The notes under the pieces: model-generated | Told to the model about the DNA's origin: nothing | Seen by the model: the letters and a program-made list of their open reading frames with translations, nothing else | Databases searched by the model: none | Position numbers and translations under genes: made by a program | Assembly (NCBI RefSeq): GCF_035594765.1 | Contig: NW_026943828.1 | Coordinates: 4,741,175 to 4,805,174, forward strand | DNA: 64,000 bases | Reading direction: 5' to 3' | DNA from: Anolis carolinensis | Lineage: Eukaryota | In this document: positions 2,165 through 60,656 of the stretch, piece by piece | Layout of the letters: each line of letters opens with the position of its first letter | Numbering within the stretch: position 1 is the stretch's first letter

Positions 2165-2575
2165 TTTCATGCATTGCAGGCACGACTGGTGAGGAGGAGA
2201 GACGGGGCCTTCTCGGTGGCGGCCCCTCAGTGTGGAACTCCTTCCCTGGGAGGATCAGATCGGCCGCTTCCGCCCGTCCTGTCATTTCGCAAACAAGAGA
2301 AACCATGGCTTTGGGATCAAGCATTTGGCCCGTCAGAATGACCTGTGCAATATAGTTGGAACTGGCTTTGGATTGATGGATAGGATTATCTGGCATCAAA
2401 TCTAGGCACAAGAGTCGTCTCATGTTTACATAGGTTGTTTTAAATTGTTGTTTAAAGGCTTTTAATTGTTGTTGTTGTTGTTCAGGCACGGAATAATGCC
2501 ACTCACGTAAGCCACTCTGCGTCCTCTTCGGGGTGAGAAGGGCGGGATATCAATGGAATAATCAAAATAAATAAC
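2165..2575 (+). mobile_element. Decayed L2-like LINE 3' fragment
   Basis: Encodes RDGAFSVAAP-like L2 C-terminal motif, followed by the GAGAAGGGCGGGATAT...AATAAATAA tail type seen elsewhere in the window. Confidence 0.55.
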
Positions 2576-3340
2576 ATGGCGGAAACAACAGAGCAGGTGG
2601 ATCCTAGAAACACAACGGGACAGACAGACAGACAGGCAGGCAGGCGGAGGGAAACCACTGGAGCAGACCTTCCGGCCCGGGAGGCGTCCTGTGGAGACCC
2701 GTCTGGGGAGGAGGGCATCCTGGGAGTTGTAGGCCTCCCTCCCTCCCTCCGCCGAGGACGGGCCTGGCCCACACTCCCGCCGCCAACCGGGCCCCTCCGC
2801 CTCCCCCCCGGGCACCCCGGCGAGCCCCCCTCTCCCCACAGACCTCTCTCTCTCTCCGCCGCCTTCCTTCCCGCCTCACAGACACAGACCAGGCCTCAGG
2901 CCAGGCCAGGCGCCGCCATCTTCCTCCTCGTCTTCCTCCTTCCCCGGAGCCCGCCCCCGCCCCTCCCATTGGCTGAGCCCGGGACGCCCCGCCCACCGGA
3001 GGAACCCCATTGGCTACGTCCTGCTCCCCGGCCTTGATTGACGGGCGGCGAGGAAGGGCTTCCGTGGTCCGAGCGAGGCCTGTGAGGCCAGGCCGGGAGG
3101 GAGGAGGCCCCGCTGGGCAGGCCTGGCCGAGGAGAGGCCGCGGAGGGAGGGAGGCCGGAGGGGAGGGGAGGGGGCGGGGCCGGGAAACCTCCCTCCCGGG
3201 AGCCGTCGTTCGCCCTCCCTCCCGCCCTTGAGCCCCGCCCGGGAGGCTCCTCAGCCAAGGCGCCCAAGGGGAGAAGCTCCGTCTGAGGGAGATTCTGGGG
3301 TGGACCTGGCAGGAGGGGAGGGAGGGAGGGAGGGGGAGGT
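2576..3340 (-). promoter_or_regulatory. GC-rich promoter cassette copy 1 (gene probably left of the window)
   Basis: CpG-rich; two CCAAT boxes, GC boxes, YY1 motif AAGATGGCGGC (2922-2912), ZNF143-type CTACAACTCCCAGG (~2719-2733); paralogous to copies at 6.9, 45.6 and 49.6 kb. Confidence 0.7.
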
Positions 3341-3960
3341 CGCCCACAACCTCAGGCCTTGCGGACCATGGAAACACTGGCTTTGTCAAAGCACCTGAGC
3401 AACGCCGGGTTATTATTATTATTCTTGTGCTACAATACATCTATATATATAGAAGAGTGATGGCATCACGACGACTCACAAAACAACAAAAGTACAGGCC
3501 CCCCAACCTCGAAATTTGACAACACAACCCATCATCCATGCCTCAAGGTTGATACAACAAAAAGAAAAGAAAAATAAAGTCCTAATTAGAGGGAGAGCAA
3601 TAATTTTTTTTTTATCCAATTGCTGCCAGTTTAGGGGGCTAATCTCTGCCCACTTGGTCTCCTAGCAACCAATTCAGCTAAGGGACAGCCAGGTTTCAGT
3701 TAGGAGACAGGTAGATTTAGGCCTCACTGAGTCTTCTTCCACAGATTATCTAATTTGCACTGGATTATATGGCAGTGTAGACTCAAGGCCCTTCCACACA
3801 GCTATAGAACCCAGTTATAATCTTATATCATCTGCTTTGCACTGGATTATCTTGACTCCACACTGCCATATAATCCACTTCAGTGTGCATTTTATACAGC
3901 TGTGAAGAAGGGGCCTCAGATAATCCAGTTCTGAGCAGATAATATAAGATTAGAAATATA

Positions 3961-4619
3961 CAGTAGAGTCTCACTTATCCAACGTAAACAGGCCGGCAGG
4001 ATAAGTGAATATGTTGGATAATAAGAAGGGATTCAGGAAAAGCCAATTAAACATCAGATTAGGTAATCGTTATACAAATTAAGCACCAAAACATCATATT
4101 ATACAACAAATTTGACAGAAAAAGTAGTTCCATGCGCAGTAATGCTATGTAGTATTTACAGTAGAGTCTCACTTATCCAACACTCGCTTATCCAACGTTC
4201 TGGATTATCCAACACATTTTTGTAGTCAATGCTTTCCATATATCGTGATATTTTGGTGCTAAATTCATAAATACAGTAATTACTATATAGCATTACTGTG
4301 TACTGAACTACTTTTTCTGACAAATTTGTTGTCTAACATGATGTTTTGGTGCTTAATTTGTAAAATCATAACTTTATTTGATGTTTAATAGGGTTATCCT
4401 TAATTCCTCATTATCCAACATATTCGCTTATCCAACGTTCTGCTGGCCCGTTTATGTTGGATAAGTGAGACTCTACTGTACTGTATTTACAAATTTACCA
4501 CTAAAATATCACAATGAATTTAAAACACTGACTACAAAAGCATTGATTATGAAAAGGCAGACTGCGTTGGATAATCCAGAACATTGTATAAGCGAATGTT
4601 GGGTAAGTGAGATTCTACT
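3961..4619. mobile_element. Nested Tc1/mariner-type MITEs (inner copy 4159-4478)
   Basis: TIR CAGTAGAGTCTCACTTATCCAA flanked by TA; inner copy inserted inverted in an outer copy of the same family. Confidence 0.75.
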
Positions 4620-4699
4620 TTAATATGAAATAATTACTGGGATAGAATAATGCAGAACAATATAATCTCTAAAACCAGGACAGTAAATAAACAGGGGAA

Positions 4700-5185
4700 T
4701 TCCACACAGGAAACAATCGGGGCCAGCTAACACCTCCCAACAAAGTATTCCCATCATCAAAGTCTGGCAAATCCTGTTTTCTCAGGGCCACAGACAGTAG
4801 AAGCACATAAAATATCGCAAACAACATCACTCTGAAAACAAGGGAATTCCAGACAGGAAACAATCAGGGCCAGCTAACACCTCCCAACAAAGTATTCCCA
4901 TCATCAAAGTCTGGCAAATCCTGTTTTCTCAGGGCCACAGACAGTAAAAGCACATAAAATATCGCAAACAACATCACTCTGAAAACAAGGGTATTCCAGA
5001 CAGGAAACAACCAGGGCCAGCTAACACCTCCCAACAAAGTATTCCCATCATCAAAGTCTGGCAAATCCTGTTTTCTCAGGGCCACAGACAGTAAAAGCAC
5101 ATAAAATATCGCAAACAACACCACTCTGAAAACAAGGGAATTCCAGACAGGAAACAATCAGGGCCAGCTAACACCTCCCAACAAA
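4700..5185. repeat. ~148-bp tandem repeat (about 3 units) inside the Helitron
   Basis: GGAAACAATCAGGGCCAGCTAACACCTCCCAACAAAG recurs about every 148 bp; same repeat at 46600-46865. Confidence 0.85.
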
Positions 5186-5339
5186 AAATTCACTCAGGGA
5201 GGAAACAGCCAGGCTTTAAAGCTGCAAGGCCATTACATCCTAATCATTTTTCCTAATTGTAGCATTCATACTTGCCTCCAACAAACAAAAAAAACCAATC
5301 AGAAATATTGTATATTCACAACCTTTAGGAAATAATATC

Positions 5340-5660
5340 CCCTGATGGCGCAGCGTGTTAAAGCGCTGAGCTGCTGAACTTCTGGACCGAAAGACCACAG
5401 GTTTGAATTGGGGGAGCGGAGAGAGCCCCCACTGTTAGCCCCAGCTTCTGCCAACCCAGAAGTTCAAAAACATGCAAATGTGAGTGCATCAATAGGTACT
5501 GCTCCGGCGGGAAGGTAACGCCGTTCCATGTAGTCATCCCACATGACCTTGGAGGAGTCTACGGACAACGCCGGCTCTTCGGCTTAGAAATGGAGATGAG
5601 CACCAACCTCCAGAGTCAGACACGACTGGACTTAACGTCAGGGGGAAACCTTGACCCTTG
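5340..5660 (+). mobile_element. Sauria-SINE-like fragment carried within the Helitron
   Basis: tRNA-like head (TGGCGCAGCGTG...GGTTTGAATT) and body GGACAACGCCGGCTCTTCGGCTTAGAAATGGAGATGAGC; same piece at ~47020-47340. Confidence 0.65.
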
Positions 5661-6219
5661 ACCTTAACTACCACCAATTCCTCAAGACTTTATTTCCCAG
5701 ACCACCAGACTTCGCCACAGCAACGCGTGGCCGGGCACAGCTAGTCTAATATAAAATATATTACATTGTAAAACAATCATGTAAGGCCGCAGAAGGGAAG
5801 GCGAGTCCCAGGTCCATCCTTGGTGGGGCTCAGAGTTCAGTTCTTAGAGGGCAGGGAACTACACATCCCGGTCCCTACCACTCCTAGAAATCAGGGTCAA
5901 TCCTCCCCAGACCCCTCTCTCCAGTCTGTTCAGTGGTGGACCAGTTCCTCTGCTTGCTGTGTGCCATAGAAAAGGATAGGACATAGCAGGGAATTGGCAT
6001 GCCCCTGCCCACTTCCTCTCCCTCAACCCTTTCCTATTATTTCCTATGGCACACAGCAACTGAACTCCCAAGAGAGAGAGGGAGACTCGAAGGGACCGAC
6101 CGGGATGTGTAGTTCCTCTGCAGCCTAAGAGCCGCCCTCTGAACCCCTCCAACGATGGGCCTGGGACTCGCTTGGCACGCAGGCCCAACCCCAAAGGCCA
6201 CCTTGGCATCCCGGCCGGG

Positions 6220-21920: not shown

Positions 21921-22840
21921 CATTTTTTTATAGTTGTAGGAATAGCATCTGTTTGCATTTGCTCCAGGGTTGCTGCAGATTCTGCAGCAGTCTGATGGTT
22001 TAGCCTGTTTGCAAGTCTTTGCCGCTTGCAGCCTGCAAATGTGTCATTTTGTAGATAGAAGGCTCCATGTTGAGAAGCCTTTTCTGCCTTCTAGACTGAA
22101 GAAGAAACAACTTAGATGTGCTTGTGTGGCCGAGCCAGGCCAACTCTGAAAAGGCCATCGTAAGTACTGACCTGCCTTTAAAACCAGCGCTGAGTATAGA
22201 TAGGGGAAAGACCTGTTCTTTCCAATAGCCTTGGCACTGGGGCAGAGAACATCTCTGGATTTCTTTGCCACTGGAGAAGCCCTACCAACTTTGCCTCAAA
22301 AACTAGCTTTGAGCTTAGATAGTTGTAGATCTTTTGATAGCAGCTCAGGGCGAGGGTGAAGAGGATCTCAGGATCTCTTTGCCTTTGGTGGAAATTAACC
22401 CAGCAACTAAAGGGGAAAAGCAAGCAAGGAACATCTGCAAGGTTTTATAAGTGGATTGTTTTTATTTGCAACCTTAATTACATGTGCCAAGTCTGCCAAG
22501 GACTTTGTGAAAATAAAATTTTGTTTGATTGTTCTACTTGAAGTGCCTTTGGTTACTGGGATTTCCAGAGCTTCTAAGTAAGGCCCCCGCAGTTCACCTG
22601 GGCAAAGGAAGAAGCACAGCCTAAAGCTTAAAAAGGTGCCTGGGTGTGACGGCATACTGTGGAAGAGGCCTAAGTGAGGCTTAACTGTGCCTGTCCCCTG
22701 GGCTGAGTGGGTTGCTAGGAGACCAAGTGGGTGGAGCTTAGGCTTCTAACTGTCAGCAATAGGATAAAAACAATTATTCATTTTCTTCTACTTAGGACTT
22801 TATTTTTCTTTTATTTTTGTTGTTGGCACCTAGGGGCAAG

Positions 22841-23194
22841 TGTCACGCTCACTTCAAACGACCAGCATGAACGCAGATCAAAGGCAGCTGCTATCAAAAC
22901 CAATCTTTATTGAAGAATACACGACTTGGGAAAAGTCGAGAATGACATAATGTTTACATACAACCACTTTTATTACCTTTGCTACTACGTCACATCACAC
23001 GTAAATATCATCACCAAAACCCCACCCCCTGTATCACATTTCTACCATTTTCACACAAACTACTCATTATACTTGTTTACATTTTCACTCCACCGGTTCC
23101 CAGGCTGTGCTGCCAGGTGTTCCAGGAGCGCGCTTTGTTATGGCTCCAATTTCCAGAGCTTGCAGACTCAGCTCTGGGAATTGGCCCCATGACA
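22841..23194 (-). repeat. 3' LTR
   Basis: Direct repeat of 28131-28484. Confidence 0.95.
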
Positions 23195-23266
23195 TGGTGC
23201 CCCTCCTTTCGCCGACCCCTCCTGTGCTCTCTCCGTCTTGATCCTGAAATAAATCAAACAGGAATA

Positions 23267-26200
23267 CTATGTATCCATTTTATCCAAAGTACCCATATAC
23301 TTTTTTAACAAGCTGCGATGGAATACAGGATGTATTTTTCCCAGACTTTTCGGCAAGAACAATTGGAAAGTCACTTCGTTTATGACTTTCTGTACTCGGA
23401 AGGGTCCAATGAAATTGGGGCCCAGCTTTTTTGAAGGTAGGCCTAGTTTCTGTGTGCTTAGCCACACTAAGTCCCCTTCTTTTAGTTTATCGCCTTCCAT
23501 CCTTTTTTTATCTGCGAATGTCTTATATTTTTTGTGCGCCTCCTTTAAGGATGCAGTCACCTAACCCCAACATTCTAGCATTTGGGCTTTCCATTTCCCT
23601 GTCCCTATTTCTTCATTCTCTGCCCAAGTTGGCAATTGGGGGAGAGGCTGGACCTCATATCCATAAACTATTTCGAATGGGGTTTTATTTGTTGCAGAAT
23701 GGACAGTAGAATTAAAGGCTAGTTCAGCGAAGGCTAGCCACTTAGACCAATCGTTTTGTCTCATATTAGAGTATATGCGAAGGAATTGCCCAAGCGTCTG
23801 TTGGGTACGTTCTACCGCCCCGTTTGTCATGGGGTGAAAAGCAGAACTTAGGCTCCTTTCTGCTCCTAGCATTTCCAAGTATTTCCCCCAGAATTTTGCC
23901 GTAAATTGAACACCCCTATCGCTGACCACCCTACTAGGACATCCATTAAGTTTGTAAATGTGGTTTATGTATAATTCAGCCAATTTCTCTGCTGATGGTA
24001 ATTTCGCAAGTGCTATGAAGTGAGCCTGCTTGGAAAACAGGTCTAACACTGTCCATATATAACGATGTCCTTTACTGACAGGCAATTCTCCCACAAAGTC
24101 CATAGCTACACATTCCTAAGGTCTGGTAGGTTCTGTCACCGGTTGCAACAGACCCATTGGCTTCCCTCCCCTCGATTTATTCATGGCACAATCATCACAT
24201 TGGGTAACATAATTTTTATGTCCTTTCTCATCCCTGGCCACCAACAATGTTTTGCTATTGCCTTCGTTGTCTTTGTAATCCCCATATGACCAGCGCTCTG
24301 GTTATTATGAAAACGATGCAAAATCTTAGTCCTTAACATTGCTGGAATATACAGTTTCTTTTTCACAAACCAAATTTCTCCCTTCTTCTCCCCTTTTTCT
24401 GTGTTGGATGAAATCCACTGATCCCTTTCATATGATTGTATCAGTTCCTTTTCCCAACTATCCCCTTCGTCAAATTTGACTACGGCCGTACTCTCCCTTT
24501 GGGCTTGTGCCCTTGTACTGACAGCTAAACCCCATTGCCTTTCGGAAAACAAAGTTCCTTCCTTTGCTGTGGCTACATCCTCGTGTTGAGGCATGCGTGA
24601 AAGGGCATCGGCCAAGACATTCTGTTTTCCTTGGAAAAATTTCAGTTGGAAATTGAACCTGCTGAAGTATTGCGCCCATCTAATTTGTTTGGGGGATAAT
24701 TTTCGTGGGGATTTTAAGTACTGGAGGTTCTTATGATCAGACCAGACTTCAAATGGAATTTCGCTCCCTTCGAGGAAGTGTCGCCAACATTCCAATGCCT
24801 TTAATATAGCTAATGCTTCTTTTTCCCATATGGGCCAGCATTTCTCAGTTTCGCTAAATTTTCGTGATAAATACCCACAAGGTTTCAAATTCCCATTTTG
24901 ATCCTTTTGCAATAATACTGCCCCATATGCACAATCCGAAGCATCGCAATGGATTATGAAGGGACTCTGGATATCGGGGTGCTTTAGGACAGGTTCCTCC
25001 GTGAAGCGTTCTTTAAGGGTTTCAAAAGCCTTTTGGCATTCTGGCGTCCAACTCAGTTTGGCGCCAGGGGCTTTCACTTTTGCCGTCTCCTCTTTCCCCT
25101 TCGTTTTTAAATGTTCAGTAAGGGGTGCAGTTATTTGCGCAAAGCCTTTTATGAATGATCTATAAAAATTTGCAAACCCCAGAAATGATTGCAATTGCCT
25201 CCTCGTTTGAGGTACTCCCCATTCCTTTACGTCTGATACTTTAGACGGGTCCATAGCTAATCCATCCGGAGATATCCGATACCCCAGAAAGTCAATTTGT
25301 GTCTTATTGAATTCACATTTGGAAAGTTTTGCATACAGCTTTGCTTCCCTTAGTTTTTGCAAAACTTCCCGGACCAGTTCCACGTGTTTTTCTTTGTCCT
25401 CGCTTACGATAAGGATATCATCCAAAAATATGAATACTCCTCGGTACAACAGTGGGTGCAAGATTTCATTTATAAGCTGCATAAAGCAAGAGCCTCCGTT
25501 TTTTAATCCAAAAGGCAAAATTTGATATTCAAAAAGTCCGAATGCGCAGGAAAATGCAGTTTTCCAAGTATCCTCGGGTTTGATTCTTAATTTATGATAC
25601 GCTTCGATTAAATCGAGTTTGGTAAATATACTCCCTTTCTTTAACATGGTAATCAGATCTTTTACTAATGGCATAGGGTATTTATTATCCTTTGTAATTG
25701 CGTTTAAATTGCGATAGTCAATGCACAGTCTTAAAGAGTTGTCTTTCTTTCTCCTAAATAATACGGGGGCTCCCAAAGGGGAGCTGGATGGCTTAATGAA
25801 GCCCCGCGCCAGGTTTTTATCAATATATTTCCTCAATTCCTCCTTCTCCTGAACAGACATAGGGTAAACCTTTGGTTTAGGTAAGTTTGCCCCTGGGGTT
25901 ATTTCGATCCCCACTTCTATATTCCTTTTGGGAGGTAATTTACTTGCTTCTTTCTGATTGAACACATCCACAAAGTCTCTATATTCAGGGGGCAACAGTT
26001 CTTGGTTTATTTCCTCCGGTTCATTTCCCTCGCTCTCTTCCCCTGCTATCTTGCTTATTTCCCATTGTGTTTGTTGCTCTTTAAATGACATGCTCTTTCC
26101 CCTCCAATCTACTTCGGGGTTTGCCTGCTCCAGCCACGGGATCCCAAGTATTACATTATACGTGGCAATAGGGGCTACCACAAAGGATATTCCTCCCTCC

Positions 26201-28083
26201 CACTTGCCTACTTTACACGGGATCCCCTGTATTTCTTTCGTGGATGCCTCCCCAGCAGCAACCGATCCGTCCAATCGCGCGAACGCAATCGGAGCTTTCA
26301 GTTCAGTTTGCTGGCATTTCAGCGCCTCCGCTAATTCTGGAGTTATAATGTTCCTAGAGCAGCCGCAATCCACGAATGCTCTACAGGTGGCTCGATTCTC
26401 TAGCCCTGATAGGCAGATAGGCACTACTATCATGCATTTGTCTTGACTCACCAGCTGCTCCGGGGGTTCTGGGGCTCGCACCTCCTCCTCCGCTCGTCTC
26501 CCGGCTGCTGGCGTGGGTTTTACGGCTTTGGGGGGCTCCCCCTTCCGGGCCCAACATTCTGCCGCCCGATGGCCCGTCTTTCCACACACAAAGCATCCTG
26601 TCTTGGGTTTGTTGTCGTCTCCTTTGGAGGGGATCCCGGGCCGCCCTCCTGGTCGCTCCTGCTTCCGCGTTTCTCCCCGACCCCTCGTTGCCGGTCGCTG
26701 CTGGGCGCCGCCGCTCCGAAAGCGCCTTACTTGGGACAGGGTGGATTCAACGCGCCCTGCCAATTGAATCCATCCCTGTAATGACTCCGGGTCATCTCTG
26801 TGCGCCGCCCAGCTGAATATCTCGGGGCGCAGTCCCTCTTTGAATATCTCCACTTTGGTCACTTCGGACCATTCTGGTACCCTTTCTGCGAGATGGAGGA
26901 ATTCTTCTGCATACTCGGGCACCGTTTTGTTCCTTTGTTTTATGACCTTAAGTTGATCACGGGCTCTTAATTGCTCCAGCGGGTCTCTGAAACGGTTCTC
27001 TAGCCCCAGGAATTGGGGCACTGACTTCAAGCACGGGTCGCGTCTGGCATGTAACTGCACATACCAGCTGGCCGCCCCCCTTTTTAGGGTATTACCAATG
27101 GCCCGAATCATGCTTCCTTCGGAGCGGAATGTGTGCGCATTGTCCTCCATGTATCCTCTGATGCCAATGAGGAAAAAGTTCAGCTCGGATGATTCCCCTC
27201 CGTATTCCAATTTGAGCTCCTCTCTCCTAGGCATCCATTCTGTGGCCCGTTGTCTCTGCATGGGTGGTCTGGGGAAGAGTTGCATCGGGTTCCCTTGGGC
27301 GGCCCCTTTGACCATGCCGCGCCCCAGCCCGGCGGTTGTTCCCCGCGGCTCTCAAAATTCTGCCGCTGCCATCGGCCCTTCCACCCATCTGAATGCGGGC
27401 CCTGCTGTAGCCCCCGCACCTCGCCTTCCTTCGTCGTACGGCGCATCCTCCCCATCTCCATGGATCTCCGGCTCCTCTTCGCCTTCCTCCGCCAACCCAC
27501 TGGACCCGATCCCTGGTCCCAGCGGCCTTTCAACCCCGACGCCCATTCGGGGGGTTGGGAGTCCTGTTGGAGTTGGCGGCCTCAGAGTTCCCAATGCTTG
27601 CTGGCGATCCACCTCGCGCGCCATCCTCTCTCGGAACTCCAGCTCCTGCCAGTACTCCTCGTCTCCGTCGCCGCCTGCCACCGCTGGGCTCTGCGTCGAT
27701 GCGCGCTGGCCCCTCTGGCTCCAAGCCTCGTCCTTACTCGGCTCTCTTTCGGCACCGTATCGAGTGGGCTCCCTCTGGAGATTCTCTTCCAACAGCGGCA
27801 CCAATCTTCCCACGGTTTCCGACAGCCTGGACAAGTTGGTCTCCAAGATGGACAACCGTAGGGCCACGGTCTCCGGCATGCTCCCTCCAGACCCCCAACT
27901 GGTCTCTGCAGCCGCCGAGACGCCTCTTCCTCCTCTAGGGATCCTCTGGGTCACTCTGTTAGGTCTGGGGTAGCCGGTAGAGGAAGCGATGGCTTGTAGC
28001 GTTTCCTCTCCCAGCGGCCGAACCTCTGGCAGGGGCCCCTCTGCCCCCTTCGGGCTCTGGTCGCCCCTTCCACTCATTGTCAC
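23267..28083 (-). pseudogene. gag-pol polyprotein, single reading frame with lesions
   Basis: ORFs 28083-27352 and 27315-24181 are in frame, separated by one TGA; CFVCGKTGHRAAEC, FVDCGC, FLDDILI, CDASD; frameshift at ~24215; TAG stops at ~24116 and 23561; ends after GPY/F with no chromodomain. Confidence 0.92.
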
Positions 28084-28130
28084 TTCACTGCGACTCCGCA
28101 GGAGGGTGAGAATGGGATTCTCGACTTAAA

Positions 28131-28484
28131 TGTCACGCTCACTTCAAACGACCAGCATGAACGCAGATCAAAGACAGCTGCTCTCAAAACCAATCTTTAT
28201 TGAAGAACACACGACTTGGAAAAAGTCGAGAATGACATAATGTTTACATACAACCACTTTTATTACCTTTGCTACTAGGTAACATCACACGTAAATATCA
28301 TCACCAAAACCCCACCCCCTGTATCACATTTCTACCATTTTCACACAAACTACTCATTATACTTGTTTACATTTTCACTCCACCAGTTCCCAGGCTGTGC
28401 TGCCAGGTGTTCCAGGAGCGCGCTTTGTTATGGCTCCAATTTCCAGAGCTTGCAGACTCAGCTCTGGGAATTGGCCCCATGACA
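28131..28484 (-). repeat. 5' LTR
   Basis: TATA-like TAATAAAAG ~28265-28257, AATAAA 28201-28196. Confidence 0.95.
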
Positions 28485-28659
28485 CCCCAGCATCCATTTC
28501 CACCTCAGGATCCCCACATAAATCCTGCTCAGAAGACTCCCCATCAGTCTCCCTGACCCTTTTCCTAAACAAATCCTCCAATGAGCCCTCCTCGCGAGGG
28601 CTTTTCCTTCCTCTCCTGATCCCACCACTATCATTCACAGTCTCTGAAGGCGCATTCAC

Positions 28660-29260
28660 AACAAGAATACTTTGAATACAGTAATAGAAACTCCAAATTA
28701 TTAGCCAAGGCAGCACACATTAGAAAGGAAAAAATTAATAACATCCATTAAAGACAAGGAAGGTAAGAATCATACAAGGATGGAAGACAAAATATTAACT
28801 TTTCCAAGATCATATCAAGAACTATACTTGGCAAAAGAAAACTCCAAAAGTAAAATAGAGGAATATATTGAGAAATATTGGAAAATAAAGATCCAGGAAA
28901 CAGATACATTAGTTATGGAACTAAGAGTATTAAAACAAATAAAATTAATTTATTTGCAGAAGATACCCATTTATCAGTGGAAAACCCAATACAACAATGG
29001 GGAAAAAATGAAAATTACCTAGAAGAATTTGGGAAAATTAAAAGTTTTGCAAATTAACTGGAACAAGTCAGAAGTGTAGTTATTTAATTATCACTAAGAA
29101 GAGATTTAAAAAATAAAACAGGAGGGGATAATTAAAATTAAAGACAATTAAGGATCTGGGAATAAATGTTATAGAGAATTAGAAGATTTAGATACTAATA
29201 ATTTTATTAAACTAAGAAAGGAAATAAATATACAATTATTAGAATATGCTAAACTCAAAT
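28660..29260 (+). mobile_element. Decayed L1-like ORF2 fragment
   Basis: Paralogous to 42250-43100, with an internal deletion. Confidence 0.65.
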
Positions 29261-29307
29261 TGATGTCTATTCCATGAAAAGCTCTGTCCACACTCCATGC
29301 ATTTCTA

Positions 29308-29421
<114 letters not shown>

Positions 29422-29472
29422 TCAACGTAGTTCTGAACTATGAGCAAAGCTCTGTCCACACTCCAGGCATTT

Positions 29473-31465
<1,993 letters not shown>

Positions 31466-33082: not shown

Positions 33083-33891
33083 CTAGCTGTGCCCAGCCAC
33101 GCGTTGCTGTGGCGAAGTATGGTGGTATGGGAAATAAAGTATTGAGGAATTGGTGGTAGTTAAGGTCAAGGGTCCCCTGGGCTGAGTGGGTTGCTAGGAG
33201 ACCAAGTGAACAGAGCTTAGCCTTCTAACTGGCAGCAATTGGATAAAAACAATTATTCCTCTCCCTCTAATTAGGACTTTATTTTTCTTTTCTTTTTGTT
33301 GTATTAACCTAGAGGCATGGATGAGGGGTTGTGTTGTCAAATTTCGAGGTTGGGGGTTGTTTACTTTTGTTGTTTTGTCCGCTGCCGTGATGCCATCACT
33401 CTTTTATATATATAGACTAGCTGTGCCCGGCCACGCATTGCTGTGGCAAAGTGGTGGTGGTATTGGTTAAAAATTGTTGTGTAATTTTTATTTGACGTTA
33501 TTTGCAATTTTTTAATTAATTTTATTGTAAGTTATATTTTTATTTATTATATTTTATTATTTTCTTGTATTACTTTTAGTTATTTTCTGTTATTATAGTA
33601 TTTTATTGTATTAATTTTTTAGTGTTTTTAATTATTTTTTAGTGTTTTTATTATTTTTTATTGGGTTGCTAGGAGACCAAGTTGGAGGAGCTTAGCCTTC
33701 TAACTGGCAGCAATTGGATAAAAACAATTATTCCTCTCCCTCTAATTAGGACTTTATTTTTCTTTTCTTTTTGTTGTATCAACCTAGAGGCATGGATGAG
33801 GGGTTGTGCTGGCAAGTTTCGAGGTTGTGGGGTGTTTACTTTTGTTGTTTTGTCCGCTGCCGTGATGCCATCACTCTTTTATATATATAGA
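33083..33891 (-). mobile_element. Helitron family A head-to-tail dimer (33891-33417 and 33416-33083)
   Basis: Two TC...hairpin-CTAG units joined directly. Confidence 0.88.
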
Positions 33892-35277: not shown

Positions 35278-36087
35278 TCTATATATATATAAAAGAGTGA
35301 TGGCATCACGGCACCGGACAAAACAACAAAACTACAGGCCCCCCAACCTCGAAATTTGACAACACAACCCATCATCCACGCCTCTAGGTTGATACAACAA
35401 AAAGAAAAGAAAAATAAAGTCCTAATTAGAGGGAGAGGAGTAATTGCTTTTATCCAATTGCTGCCAGTTAGAAGGCTAAGCTCCTCCAACTTGGTCTCCT
35501 AGCAACCCAATAAAAAATAATAAAAACACTAAAAAATAATTAAAAACACTAAAAAATTAATACAATAAAATACTATAATAACAGAAAATAACTAAAAGTA
35601 ATACAAGAAAATAATAAAATATAATAAATAAAAATATAACTTACAATAAAATTAATAAAAAAAATTGCAAATAACGTCAAATAAAAATTACACAACAATT
35701 TTTAACCAATACCACCACCACTTTGCCACAGCAACGCGTGGCCGGGCACAGCTAGTCTATATATATAAAAGAGTGATGGCATCACGGCAGCGGACAAAAC
35801 AACAAAAGTAAACACCCCACAACCTTGAAAATTGACAGCACAACCCCTCATACATGCCTCTAGGTTGATACAATAAAAAGATAAATAAATAAAGTCCTAA
35901 TTAGAGGGAGAGGAATAATTGTTTTATCCAATTGCTGCCAGTTAGAATGCTAAGCTCTGTTCACTTGGTCCCTTAGCAACCCACTCAGCCCAGGGGACCC
36001 TTGACCTTAACTACCACCAATTCCTCAATACTTTATTTCCCATACCACCACACTTCGCCACAGCAACGCGTGGCTGGGCACAGCTAG
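35278..36087 (+). mobile_element. Helitron family A head-to-tail dimer
   Basis: A|TC start, CTAG|TC junction at 35755/35756, CTAG|T end. Confidence 0.88.
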
Positions 36088-43195: not shown

Positions 43196-43696
43196 TAGCT
43201 GTGCCCGGCCACGCGTTGCTGTGGCAAAGTGGTGGTGGTATTGGTTAAAAGTTCTTGTGGAATTTTTATTTGACGTTATTTGTATTTTTTAAATTAATTT
43301 TATTGTAACTTATCTTTTTTATTTATTATATTTTATTATTTTGTTGTATTATTTTTAGTTTTTTTGTTATAGTATTTTCTTGTATTAATTTTTTAGTGTT
43401 TTTAATTATTTTATTGTATTATTTGTATTTATTTTATTTTTTATTCTTTTATTAACACTGGGCTGAGTGGGTTGCTAAGAGACCAAGTGGGCGGAGCTTA
43501 GCCTTCTAACTGGCAGCAATTGGATAAAAACAATTATTCCTCTCTCTCTAATTAGGACTTTATTTTTCTTTTCTTTTTGTTGTATCAACCTAGAGGCATG
43601 GATGAGGGGTTGTGATGTCAATTTTCGAGGTTGTGGGGTGTTTACTTTTGTTGTTTTGTCCGCTGCCGTGATGCCATCACTCTTTTATATATATAG
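43196..43696 (-). mobile_element. Helitron family A monomer
   Basis: TC...hairpin-CTAG termini on the minus strand. Confidence 0.85.
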
Positions 43697-59845: not shown

Positions 59846-60656
59846 TCTATCTATATATATATAAAAGAGTGATGGCATCACGGCGACCCACAAAACAACA
59901 AAACTACAGGCCCCCCAACCTCGAAATTTGACAACACAAGCCATCATCCACGCCTCTAGGTTGATACAACAAAAAGAAAAGAAAAATAAAGTCCTAATTA
60001 GAGGGAGAGGAGTAATTGCTTTTAGCCAATTGCTGCCAGTTAGAAGGCTAAGCTCCTCCAACTTGGTCTCCTAGCAACCCAATAAAAAATAATAAAAACA
60101 ATAAAAATAAAAAAACACTAAAAAATTAATACAATAAAATACTATAATAACAGAAAACAACTAAAAGTAATACAAGAAAATAATAAAATATAATAAATAA
60201 AAATATAACTTACAATAAAATTAATTAAAAAAATTGCAAATAACGTCAAACAAAAATTACACAACAATTTTTAACCAATACCACCACCACTTTGCCACAG
60301 CAACGCGTGGCCGGGCACAGCTAGTCTATATATATAAAAGAGTGATGGCATCACGGCAGCGGACAAAACAACAAAAGTAAACACCCCACAACCTTGAAAA
60401 TTGACAGCACAACCCCTCATACATGCCTCTAGGTTGATACAATAAAAAGATAAATAAATAAAGTCCTAATTAGAGGGAGAGGAATAATTGTTTTATCCAA
60501 TTGCTGCCAGTTAGAAGGCTAAGCTCTGTTCACTTGGTCCCTTAGCAACCCACTCAGCCCAGGGGACCCTTGACCTTAACTACCACCAATTCCTCAATAC
60601 TTTATTTCCCATACCACCAGATTTCGCCACAGCAACGCGTGGCTGGGCACAGCTAG
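59846..60656 (+). mobile_element. Helitron family A dimer (paralogue of 35278-36087)
   Basis: Same flanks and structure. Confidence 0.88.

What the first reader, a model, noticed from the sequence alone, without database searches (positions are those of the whole stretch)
23085..26460. Gypsy element predicted to make Gag by splicing out all of pol, with a C-terminus read through the PPT into the 3' LTR
Seen: gag and pol are in one frame, and I saw no slippery site at the boundary. Just after the CCHC knuckle and before the protease there is a consensus donor CTG|GTGAGT (exon ends 26452, phase 0). About 23 nt after the integrase stop and just before the PPT there is an acceptor TTTGATTTATTTCAG|GAT (exon starts 23243). 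Joining them removes 3208 nt (PR-RT-RH-IN). Gag then continues in frame for 52 codons (DQDGESTGGVGERRGTMSWGQFPELSLQALEIGAITKRAPGTPGSTAWEPVE*) through the PPT into U3, upstream of the LTR AATAAA. Established: single-ORF elements need a route to excess Gag; Drosophila copia uses a spliced gag RNA, Tf1 degrades Pol products, and sushi/PEG10 use a -1 frameshift. Inference: this vertebrate Tf1/sushi lineage uses whole-pol splicing and an LTR-encoded Gag tail, which I do not recall being described. The spliced RNA keeps PBS, PPT and R, so it could also retrotranspose as a gag-only element.
Basis: partly seen in the sequence, partly recalled or inferred. Interest (0 to 1): 0.88.

Follow-up and report, generated by a model that had tools for sequence, protein, structure and literature searches.

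The report
Lizard retrotransposon splices out pol
A dead copy of a lizard Ty3/gypsy jumping gene carries a conserved pair of splice sites that would cut out all its enzyme genes and leave a messenger for the coat protein Gag alone, the trick known from the unrelated fly element copia; public gene models in lizards and snakes use the same junction, but I could not see the spliced RNA itself.

Summary
On the minus strand lies a 5.6-kb Ty3/gypsy element (LTRs 28484-28131 and 23194-22841). The donor CTG|GTGAGT ends the exon at 26452, in phase 0. The acceptor TTTCAG|GAT starts the next exon at 23243, 23 nt after the integrase stop. The intron is 3208 nt, and the tail runs 52 codons through the PPT into U3.

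This copy is dead: it has an in-frame stop in gag, and a frameshift and two stops in integrase.

The splice reading is supported by comparison, not by reads.
- Intact relatives (LTRs 99.7-100% alike, one gag-pol frame) keep the same sites.
- The donor is an invariant island, xTG|GTRAGT, in a hypervariable linker. It is the only GTRAGT in four internal regions of about 4.7-4.9 kb.
- In Anolis carolinensis, 70 of 86 retrieved Anolis gag proteins have the spliced C-terminus. The same junction is used in single models examined in A. sagrei (two) and in three snakes, one annotated by its submitters.

My one read test (four runs, none on record as RNA) showed no junction, so RNA proof is missing. 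No pol-less DNA copies were found. The tail is not conserved: one snake model stops before the PPT.

The elements are Tf1-type self-primers. This is a new variant of the copia strategy.

The parts
28131..28484 (-). 5' LTR (354 bp, TGTCA...GTGACA)
   Evidence: Aligns with 22841-23194 at 97.8%.
28223..28233 (-). Predicted first 11 nt of the transcript (ATTCTCGACTT, LTR positions 252-262), the Tf1-type self-primer
   Evidence: Perfect complement of 28117-28127. The same pairing, with covarying letters, occurs in six other lineages. The transcription start is inferred, not shown.
28117..28127 (-). Primer-binding site for self-priming, 3 nt after the 5' LTR
26452..28077 (-). Exon 1 coding part: gag (capsid, CCHC nucleocapsid at about 26554-26598), 542 codons, with an in-frame TGA at 27352-27354
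   Evidence: Pfam Retrotrans_gag, Ty3_capsid and zf-CCHC.
26446..26451 (-). 5' splice site GTGAGT (reads Val-Ser in the gag-pol frame)
   Evidence: It is the only GTRAGT in the internal region. It is invariant as xTG|GTRAGT in WIN and L001-L005 and is GTGAGT in L012 and L014. L015 has GTAGGT.
23244..26451 (-). Predicted intron, 3208 nt: protease, RT, RNase H and integrase. This copy is broken by a frameshift near 24214-24226 and stops at 24118 and 23563; the integrase stop is at 23267-23269.
   Evidence: Pfam. tblastn of an intact relative's polyprotein. Stops listed.
23244..23258 (-). 3' splice site: pyrimidine-rich tract and CAG (TTTGATTTATTTCAG), 23 nt after the integrase stop
   Evidence: A homologous Y-tract plus YAG lies after the integrase stop in all compared lineages.
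23085..23243 (-). Exon 2 coding part: 52-codon tail and TGA, read through the PPT (purine run 23200-23210) into U3
   Evidence: No Pfam family. Tails of relatives differ in length and sequence.
22841..23194 (-). 3' LTR; AATAAA at 22906-22911
28485..28716 (-). 5' flank with a 78-codon open frame that runs in frame into U3 of the 5' LTR (unexplained; not part of the element proper)

Best explanation
The window holds a dead copy of a squamate Ty3/gypsy retrotransposon of the self-priming Tf1/sushi type, in which gag and pol form one reading frame.

The family carries a conserved 5' splice site in the linker between nucleocapsid and protease. It carries a 3' splice site about 23 nt after the integrase stop in Anolis, and up to about 70 nt after it in snakes. 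Part of the LTR-driven transcript stays unspliced and serves as genome and gag-pol mRNA. Part is spliced, loses the whole of pol (about 3.2 kb), and becomes a gag-only mRNA of about 2.1 kb.

The stop codon of that mRNA lies in the last exon. In Anolis it comes after a short, mostly acidic tail that is simply the PPT and the first U3 codons read in phase 0. This would supply the excess of Gag over Pol, as in Drosophila copia.

Shown: the sites, their phase, their conservation, the single frame of intact copies, and public gene models that use the junction.

Inferred: that the junction is used in vivo, that it sets the Gag:Pol ratio, and the transcription start.
For: - Sites and phase were read directly.
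- Domain order is gag-CCHC-PR-RT-RH-IN.
- 70 of 86 retrieved Anolis gag proteins end ...CCHC...L + short tail + MS.... One 90% cluster alone has 89 members.
- Exon junctions were derived at public loci. L001 is CTG|GTGAGT...TTTCAG|AAC with a 3215-nt intron. L002 is TTG|GTAAGT...TTCCAG|GAC, 3228 nt. L003 and L004 (A. sagrei) have 3189 and 3191 nt. The corn snake L012 is ATG|GTGAGT, 3524 nt. Ahaetulla L015 has 3484 nt. Crotalus adamanteus L014, a KAK accession that I take to be submitter annotation, is ATG|GTGAGTCA...TTACAG|GAT.
- L001-L003 have LTRs 99.7-100% alike and one open gag-pol frame to the integrase stop, 1606 codons in L001.
- The donor is an invariant island after 30 hypervariable nucleotides. 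Leu is always xTG, Val always GTR and Ser always AGT, while synonymous sites of the conserved protease start vary.
- It is the only GTRAGT in the internal regions of WIN, L001, L002 and L004.
- Whole-pol splicing for Gag is an established strategy of Drosophila copia, cited in PMC5580714.
Against: - No joint 23243/26452 appeared in any of four runs. One contig of run X1 (25951-26494) runs through the donor unspliced. None of these runs is on record as RNA, all are Logan contigs that drop rare variants, and only copies at least 90% like this old subfamily were laid.
- I could not see the evidence behind the public gene models. All but the Crotalus adamanteus model carry XP accessions or RefSeq-style names, which I take to mean one pipeline, and that pipeline could repeat the same prediction wherever the signals are conserved.
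- No gene model of this window's own subfamily was found; the best hit was 87%.
- The tail is not conserved, so it gives no sign of a function of its own.
Confidence: 0.74

Rival explanations
1. Splicing occurs but is not the element's way to excess Gag. It is leaky or host-imposed processing of a long intron-like RNA, and the Gag:Pol ratio is set after translation, as in Tf1 (degradation of Pol products).
For: The elements share Tf1's self-priming and single frame. The tail has no conserved sequence or length. No measure of spliced versus unspliced RNA was obtained.
Against: The donor is conserved at synonymous positions. The non-coding acceptor keeps its place after the integrase stop in lineages as far apart as Anolis and snakes. 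Other GTRAGT are lacking in the internal region. All this points to selection acting on the element. Harmful cryptic sites would be expected to decay in young, active families (LTRs 100% alike).
Confidence: 0.14
2. The GT and AG are not used. Leu-Val-Ser is conserved for a protein reason, for example a protease cleavage site at the NC/PR border. The public gag-only models are repeated predictions of one program that picks conserved consensus-like signals.
For: The junction was not seen in my read test. All but the Crotalus adamanteus model carry XP accessions or RefSeq-style names, which I take to mean one pipeline. Ensembl/UniRef models of the same families read on into protease instead.
Against: Ser is AGT in every lineage although six codons are available. 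Leu is always xTG and Val always GTR, while nearby conserved residues change their synonymous codons. The acceptor tract is non-coding and still conserved. A submitter annotation of Crotalus adamanteus has the same intron. A predictor led by protein homology would be expected to keep the long open pol frame (inference).
Confidence: 0.08
3. The pair of sites in this window is a chance match in a decayed copy and has no wider meaning.
For: The copy is dead and its subfamily has no gene model.
Against: The same sites, phase and spacing recur in seven other lineages from five species.
Confidence: 0.02

Closest known systems
Drosophila copia (Ty1/copia): 2-kb gag RNA made by splicing an intron of about 3 kb that covers POL (Yoshioka et al. 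1990, as cited in PMC5580714)
   Same: One gag-pol frame. The donor lies after gag and the acceptor near the 3' end. The intron is about 3 kb and unusually long for a compact element. The product is a gag-only mRNA that shares both ends with the genomic RNA.
   Different: A different superfamily (Ty3/gypsy domain order PR-RT-RH-IN) and a vertebrate host. Here the acceptor lies after the integrase stop and, in Anolis, the reading frame ends inside U3. The spliced RNA is not yet shown.
Plant Ty1/copia elements EVD and BARE1 (PMC5580714; PMC3735527)
   Same: Splicing creates a subgenomic mRNA dedicated to Gag from a single-frame element. The splice sites are conserved across families.
   Different: The plant introns are short, centred on protease, shift the frame to create a stop, and are coupled to premature polyadenylation. 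Here the whole of pol is removed, the phase is kept, and the normal LTR poly(A) site would be used. The same study found no conserved splicing in Arabidopsis Ty3/gypsy.
Tf1 of Schizosaccharomyces pombe and the vertebrate Tf1/sushi group
   Same: Single gag-pol frame. An 11-nt self-primer complementary to a site just after the 5' LTR. Integrase with the Tf2-1-type SH3 domain.
   Different: From my own knowledge, Tf1 reaches excess Gag by degrading Pol products and is not known to splice. No chromodomain is present here.
sushi-ichi / PEG10 (-1 frameshift between gag and pol)
   Same: Related capsid (Pfam PF03732, labelled PEG10_N-capsid). NCBI names one A. sagrei model PEG10.
   Different: Intact relatives here have gag and pol in the same frame with no stop between them, so no frameshift is needed.
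Cer1 of C. elegans (Ty3/gypsy) and its spliced cerv mRNA (PMC10309623)
   Same: A Ty3/gypsy element without a stop between gag and pol, whose genomic RNA keeps functional splice sites.
   Different: The Cer1 spliced product is a five-exon regulator (CERV) needed for RNA export, not a Gag-only mRNA.

Membership tests
Ty3/gypsy (Metaviridae) LTR retrotransposon | Two LTRs (TG...CA) around an internal region | tested here: met
   LTRs of 354 bp at 28484-28131 and 23194-22841, 97.8% alike, TGTCA...GTGACA.
Ty3/gypsy (Metaviridae) LTR retrotransposon | Domain order gag(CA, CCHC)-PR-RT-RNase H-IN | tested here: met
   Pfam: Retrotrans_gag, Ty3_capsid, zf-CCHC, Asp_protease, RVT_1, RT_RNaseH, Integrase_H2C2, rve and SH3_Tf2-1, in that order.
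Ty3/gypsy (Metaviridae) LTR retrotransposon | Target-site duplication of 4-6 bp | tested here: not met
   The flanks are ...CTGGGG and CTTGCC.... This copy may be recombinant. The snake copy L012 has CTGG on both sides.
Tf1/sushi group | Self-priming: the first ~11 nt of the transcript are complementary to a site just after the 5' LTR | tested here: met
   An 11-nt perfect complement (LTR position 252 versus +4 after the LTR). Complements of 10-12 nt occur at the same relative places in L001-L004, L012 and L014, with different letters.
Tf1/sushi group | gag and pol in one open frame | tested here: met
   L001-L003 have no stop from the gag ATG to the integrase stop. The window copy has the same frame, broken by later mutations.
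Tf1/sushi group (chromoviruses) | Chromodomain at the integrase C-terminus | tested here: not met
   Pfam finds only SH3_Tf2-1 (residues 29-88 of the last 97). The stop follows 9 residues later.
Gag mRNA by splicing out pol (copia-type strategy) | 5' splice site after gag and 3' splice site near the 3' end, conserved in the family | tested here: met
Gag mRNA by splicing out pol (copia-type strategy) | Spliced RNA observed | tested here: inconclusive
   No junction was seen in four runs that are not on record as RNA. Public gene models use the junction, but their evidence could not be inspected.
Gag mRNA by splicing out pol (copia-type strategy) | Excess Gag depends on the splice | not testable with these tools
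   Needs protein and RNA measurements.
-1 frameshift elements (sushi-ichi/PEG10 type) | pol in the -1 frame of gag, with an overlap | tested here: not met
   One frame throughout in L001-L003. By contrast, the unrelated Logan contig L011 does show overlapping gag and pol frames.

The most novel reading that the evidence does not exclude
A whole clade of squamate (iguanian and snake) Tf1/sushi-type Ty3/gypsy elements has evolved, independently of Ty1/copia, a selected alternative-splicing switch. It removes all of pol to make the main Gag mRNA, and the PPT and LTR start double as coding sequence for the Gag C-terminus. Young, intact, probably active copies in Anolis would make this directly testable in a vertebrate.
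Probability: 0.55. Interest if true: 0.72.

Novelty: new variant of a known kind. Interest (0 to 1): 0.62.

Why it matters
How single-frame LTR elements obtain more Gag than Pol is solved differently in each studied case: frameshift, readthrough, degradation or splicing. Splicing out pol is known for Ty1/copia elements of flies and plants. I found no description of it for Ty3/gypsy or for any vertebrate element in four full-text searches, and a plant survey found none in Ty3/gypsy.

If the junction is used, three things follow.
- It would be a case of convergent evolution of a viral-type expression strategy.
- It would explain why the Anolis carolinensis annotation, and single models in four other squamates, hold 'uncharacterized' or 'PEG10-like' gag-only genes that are really spliced products of full-length transposons. 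That matters for anyone counting domesticated capsid genes.
- It would offer young intact copies in Anolis as a vertebrate model for the balance between splicing and genomic-RNA export.

Tried and rejected
- **Read test.** One search and one laying were allowed. All holders were Logan contigs with the kind guessed. No joint appeared at 23243/26452. The listed joints were short-sided, lacked the CT..AC ends expected on the + strand, and were confined to one probable DNA run. The 'goes back 5290' joints are only the 5' LTR laid on the 3' LTR. This neither proves nor refutes splicing.
- **Pol-less DNA copies.** None was found in the probable DNA runs. None was found among the loci examined, where every gene range holds pol (full length in twelve; shortened by an internal deletion in L014).
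- **Earlier notes of this scan.** Nothing by place or by words.
- **Wider reach.** The profile search of 1.84 billion representatives gave many gag-only proteins. Those I could name with the same tail type were squamate. Logan contig L011 is a frameshift-type element. The gecko gene in L013 has a 5' intron instead. Both were set aside.
- **5' flank.** Its 78-codon open frame, which runs into U3, has no relative in the window or the fetched loci and no Pfam family. It is left unexplained.
- **Upstream ORF.** Pfam on one frame of the upstream ORF gave only spurious hits. The zinc fingers are in another frame.
- **Joined model.** The joined (spliced) sequence of the window model was not built, translated or searched. 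Its two exons were handled apart, by reference.
- **Consensus.** The consensus lines that the alignment tools print were not used.
Full report
**The element.**
Read on the minus strand, the window holds an LTR retrotransposon.
- The LTRs are 354 bp each, at 28484-28131 and 23194-22841. They run TGTCA...GTGACA and are 97.8% alike.
- gag starts at ATG 28077 and shares its frame with pol.
- Pfam finds Retrotrans_gag, Ty3_capsid, a CCHC knuckle, aspartyl protease, RVT_1, RNase H, the integrase zinc domain, the rve core and the Tf2-1-type SH3 domain, in that order. It finds no chromodomain.

The copy is dead.
- It has an in-frame TGA at 27354-27352.
- It has a frameshift near 24214-24226.
- It has stops at 24118 and 23563 in integrase.
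- It has no target-site duplication.

Upstream on the same strand lies an array of 22 C2H2 zinc fingers.

**The observation.**
- CTG at 26454-26452 is a whole codon and is followed by GTGAGT.
- The integrase stop is at 23269-23267.
- The tract TTTGATTTATTTCAG ends at 23244 and the next exon starts with GAT at 23243.
- 3208 nt are skipped.
- The frame then runs 52 codons through the purine run of the PPT and the LTR start into U3. It stops at 23087-23085, upstream of the LTR's AATAAA motifs.

The donor lies 34 codons after the knuckle and 18 codons before the protease match. On the sense strand of the 4933-nt internal region, GTRAGT occurs only once, at this place.

**Relatives and gene models.**
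A search with the gag piece alone, given by reference, found public Anolis carolinensis proteins called 'uncharacterized protein LOC1342...'. They are 529 to 578 residues long and carry gag domains only. Their 90% clusters hold 89, 27, 9, 7 and 6 members, many of them seen at several loci.

Of the first 86 proteins retrieved, 70 end with the knuckle, about 30 residues, a Leu, a short mostly acidic stretch, and then Met-Ser. The 16 exceptions are mainly Ensembl-derived UniRef or MetaClust entries (four carry NCBI names); several of them read on into protease.

I fetched loci and located the exon borders by matching the genomic translation to the public protein.

| Locus | Species | Donor | Acceptor | Intron (nt) |
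|---|---|---|---|---|
| L001 | A. carolinensis | CTG\|GTGAGT | TTTCAG\|AAC | 3215 |
| L002 | A. carolinensis | TTG\|GTAAGT | TTCCAG\|GAC | 3228 |
| L003 | A. sagrei | CTG\|GTGAGT | TTCCAG\|GAA | 3189 |
| L004 | A. sagrei | TTG\|GTGAGT | TTTCAG\|GAG | 3191 |

In each case three things hold:
- the intron holds the whole of pol;
- the acceptor follows the integrase stop by about 23 nt;
- the tail crosses the PPT into the LTR.

L001 to L003 have LTRs 99.7-100% alike and one open frame from the gag ATG to the integrase stop. In L001 that frame is 1606 codons. They are therefore young, intact elements that need no frameshift or readthrough. Six further loci of one protein all have the 4.95-kb gene range, so pol is present in all of them.

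**Beyond Anolis.**
A profile search of cluster representatives, followed by name look-ups, led to snake proteins with similar ends.
- The corn-snake model (L012) uses ATG|GTGAGT and an acceptor about 70 nt after the integrase stop. The intron is 3524 nt and the tail is five codons that stop before the PPT.
- Ahaetulla prasina (L015) uses ATG|GTAGGT. The intron is 3484 nt and the tail runs into the LTR.
- Crotalus adamanteus (L014) is a KAK accession, which I take to be submitter annotation and hence a different pipeline. It uses ATG|GTGAGTCA and TTACAG|GAT, and its stop lies just before the PPT.

**Sign of selection on the sites.**
I anchored the lineages at the donor and compared them.
- The 30 nt before the donor are hypervariable. 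The residues there read EPPEQ, ESSEK, HHSGG, APVGD and SLKGT.
- xTG|GTRAGTC is invariant in the Anolis lineages.
- Leu is always CTG or TTG, Val always GTG or GTA, and Ser always AGT.
- The conserved protease start a few codons later changes its synonymous codons freely.
- The acceptor is non-coding, yet it keeps a pyrimidine tract and YAG at a fixed distance from the stop.

This pattern is what selection on splice signals predicts. Selection on the protein alone does not predict it.

**Family.**
In the window, 11 nt lying 3 nt after the 5' LTR are the perfect complement of LTR positions 252-262. In six other lineages, 10-12 nt at the same relative places pair in the same way, with different letters.

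From my own knowledge, this is the self-priming arrangement of Tf1 and the Tf1/sushi group. It places the transcription start at about 28233. The spliced mRNA would then be about 2.1 kb.

**The read test.**
One run search and one laying were allowed. All holders were Logan contigs whose kind was only guessed, and none is on record as RNA. I laid the element without its 5' LTR on four runs from four studies at 90% likeness. The result:
- No joint appeared between 23243 and 26452.
- In the smallest run, a 544-nt contig (25951-26494) runs through the donor unspliced.
- The large runs look like genomic DNA and also show no such joint. Pol-less copies of this subfamily are therefore not common.

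Three limits apply. Contigs drop rare forms. The RNA nature of the runs is unproven. Only copies close to this old, broken subfamily were laid. The result therefore cannot decide the question.

**Reading.**
The best explanation is that this clade makes a gag-only mRNA by removing pol as one intron, as Drosophila copia does (Yoshioka et al. 1990, as described in PMC5580714). The stop codon falls in the last exon, so from general knowledge of nonsense-mediated decay the mRNA should escape that pathway.

The tail differs in length and sequence between lineages: 13 to 52 codons in Anolis and 5 to 17 in snakes. It is therefore most likely a by-product. Its acidic character is the purine-rich PPT read as GAR codons.

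Rivals:
- The splice is real but incidental, with a Tf1-like control of the ratio after translation.
- The sites are unused, and the gene models repeat one program's prediction.
- The match is chance in this one copy. The comparison excludes this.

**Novelty.**
Four full-text searches found the strategy described for copia, BARE1 and Arabidopsis Ty1/copia. They also found an explicit negative for Arabidopsis Ty3/gypsy and a different spliced product in Cer1. Nothing was found for vertebrate or Ty3/gypsy gag. The junction is, however, already embodied in public gene models. What is new is the interpretation, not the data.

**Limits of what I did.**
- The joined sequence of the window model was not built or searched.
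- Places of breakage are named without saying what would mend them.

Noticed in passing
It is preceded by ccttcag|ag near 28646. It has no relative in the window or in the fetched loci. The element lacks a target-site duplication, so its 5' side may be recombinant.
   Followed up: partly
window 28223-28233 and 28117-28127; L001-L004, L012, L014: Tf1-type self-primer: 10-12 nt about 100 nt before the end of the 5' LTR are perfectly complementary to a site 2-4 nt after the LTR. The letters covary between lineages.
   Followed up: yes
window 29195-31258 (minus strand): A tandem array with an 84-bp period encodes 22 C2H2 zinc fingers just upstream of the element on the same strand. The segment scanned (29151-31300) has 9 stops in that frame. 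Read-through from this gene could explain low-level contigs over the element.
   Followed up: partly
window 22700-22838, with copies at 33179-33317, 33662-33792, 35380-35509, 43460-43598, 59952-60081 and others: A short interspersed repeat, 81-88% alike and with at least 10 copies in the window, abuts the 3' LTR.
   Followed up: no
public annotations: Many full-length, probably active transposon copies are annotated as 'uncharacterized protein' or 'retrotransposon-derived protein PEG10' genes. One gag-only model is filed as an isoform of replication protein A 32 kDa. Such models could be mistaken for domesticated capsid genes.
   Followed up: partly
L013 (Paroedura picta), gene 2501-5827: A gecko gag-like gene has a different build: a 1662-nt intron after the first 23 codons and no pol in the range. 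It may be a domesticated or otherwise expressed gag.
   Followed up: no
run X1, loose end at window 23194: Two contigs carry the LTR start preceded by about 142 nt that match neither this element's PPT region nor its 5' flank. The LTR therefore also occurs in at least one other context.
   Followed up: no
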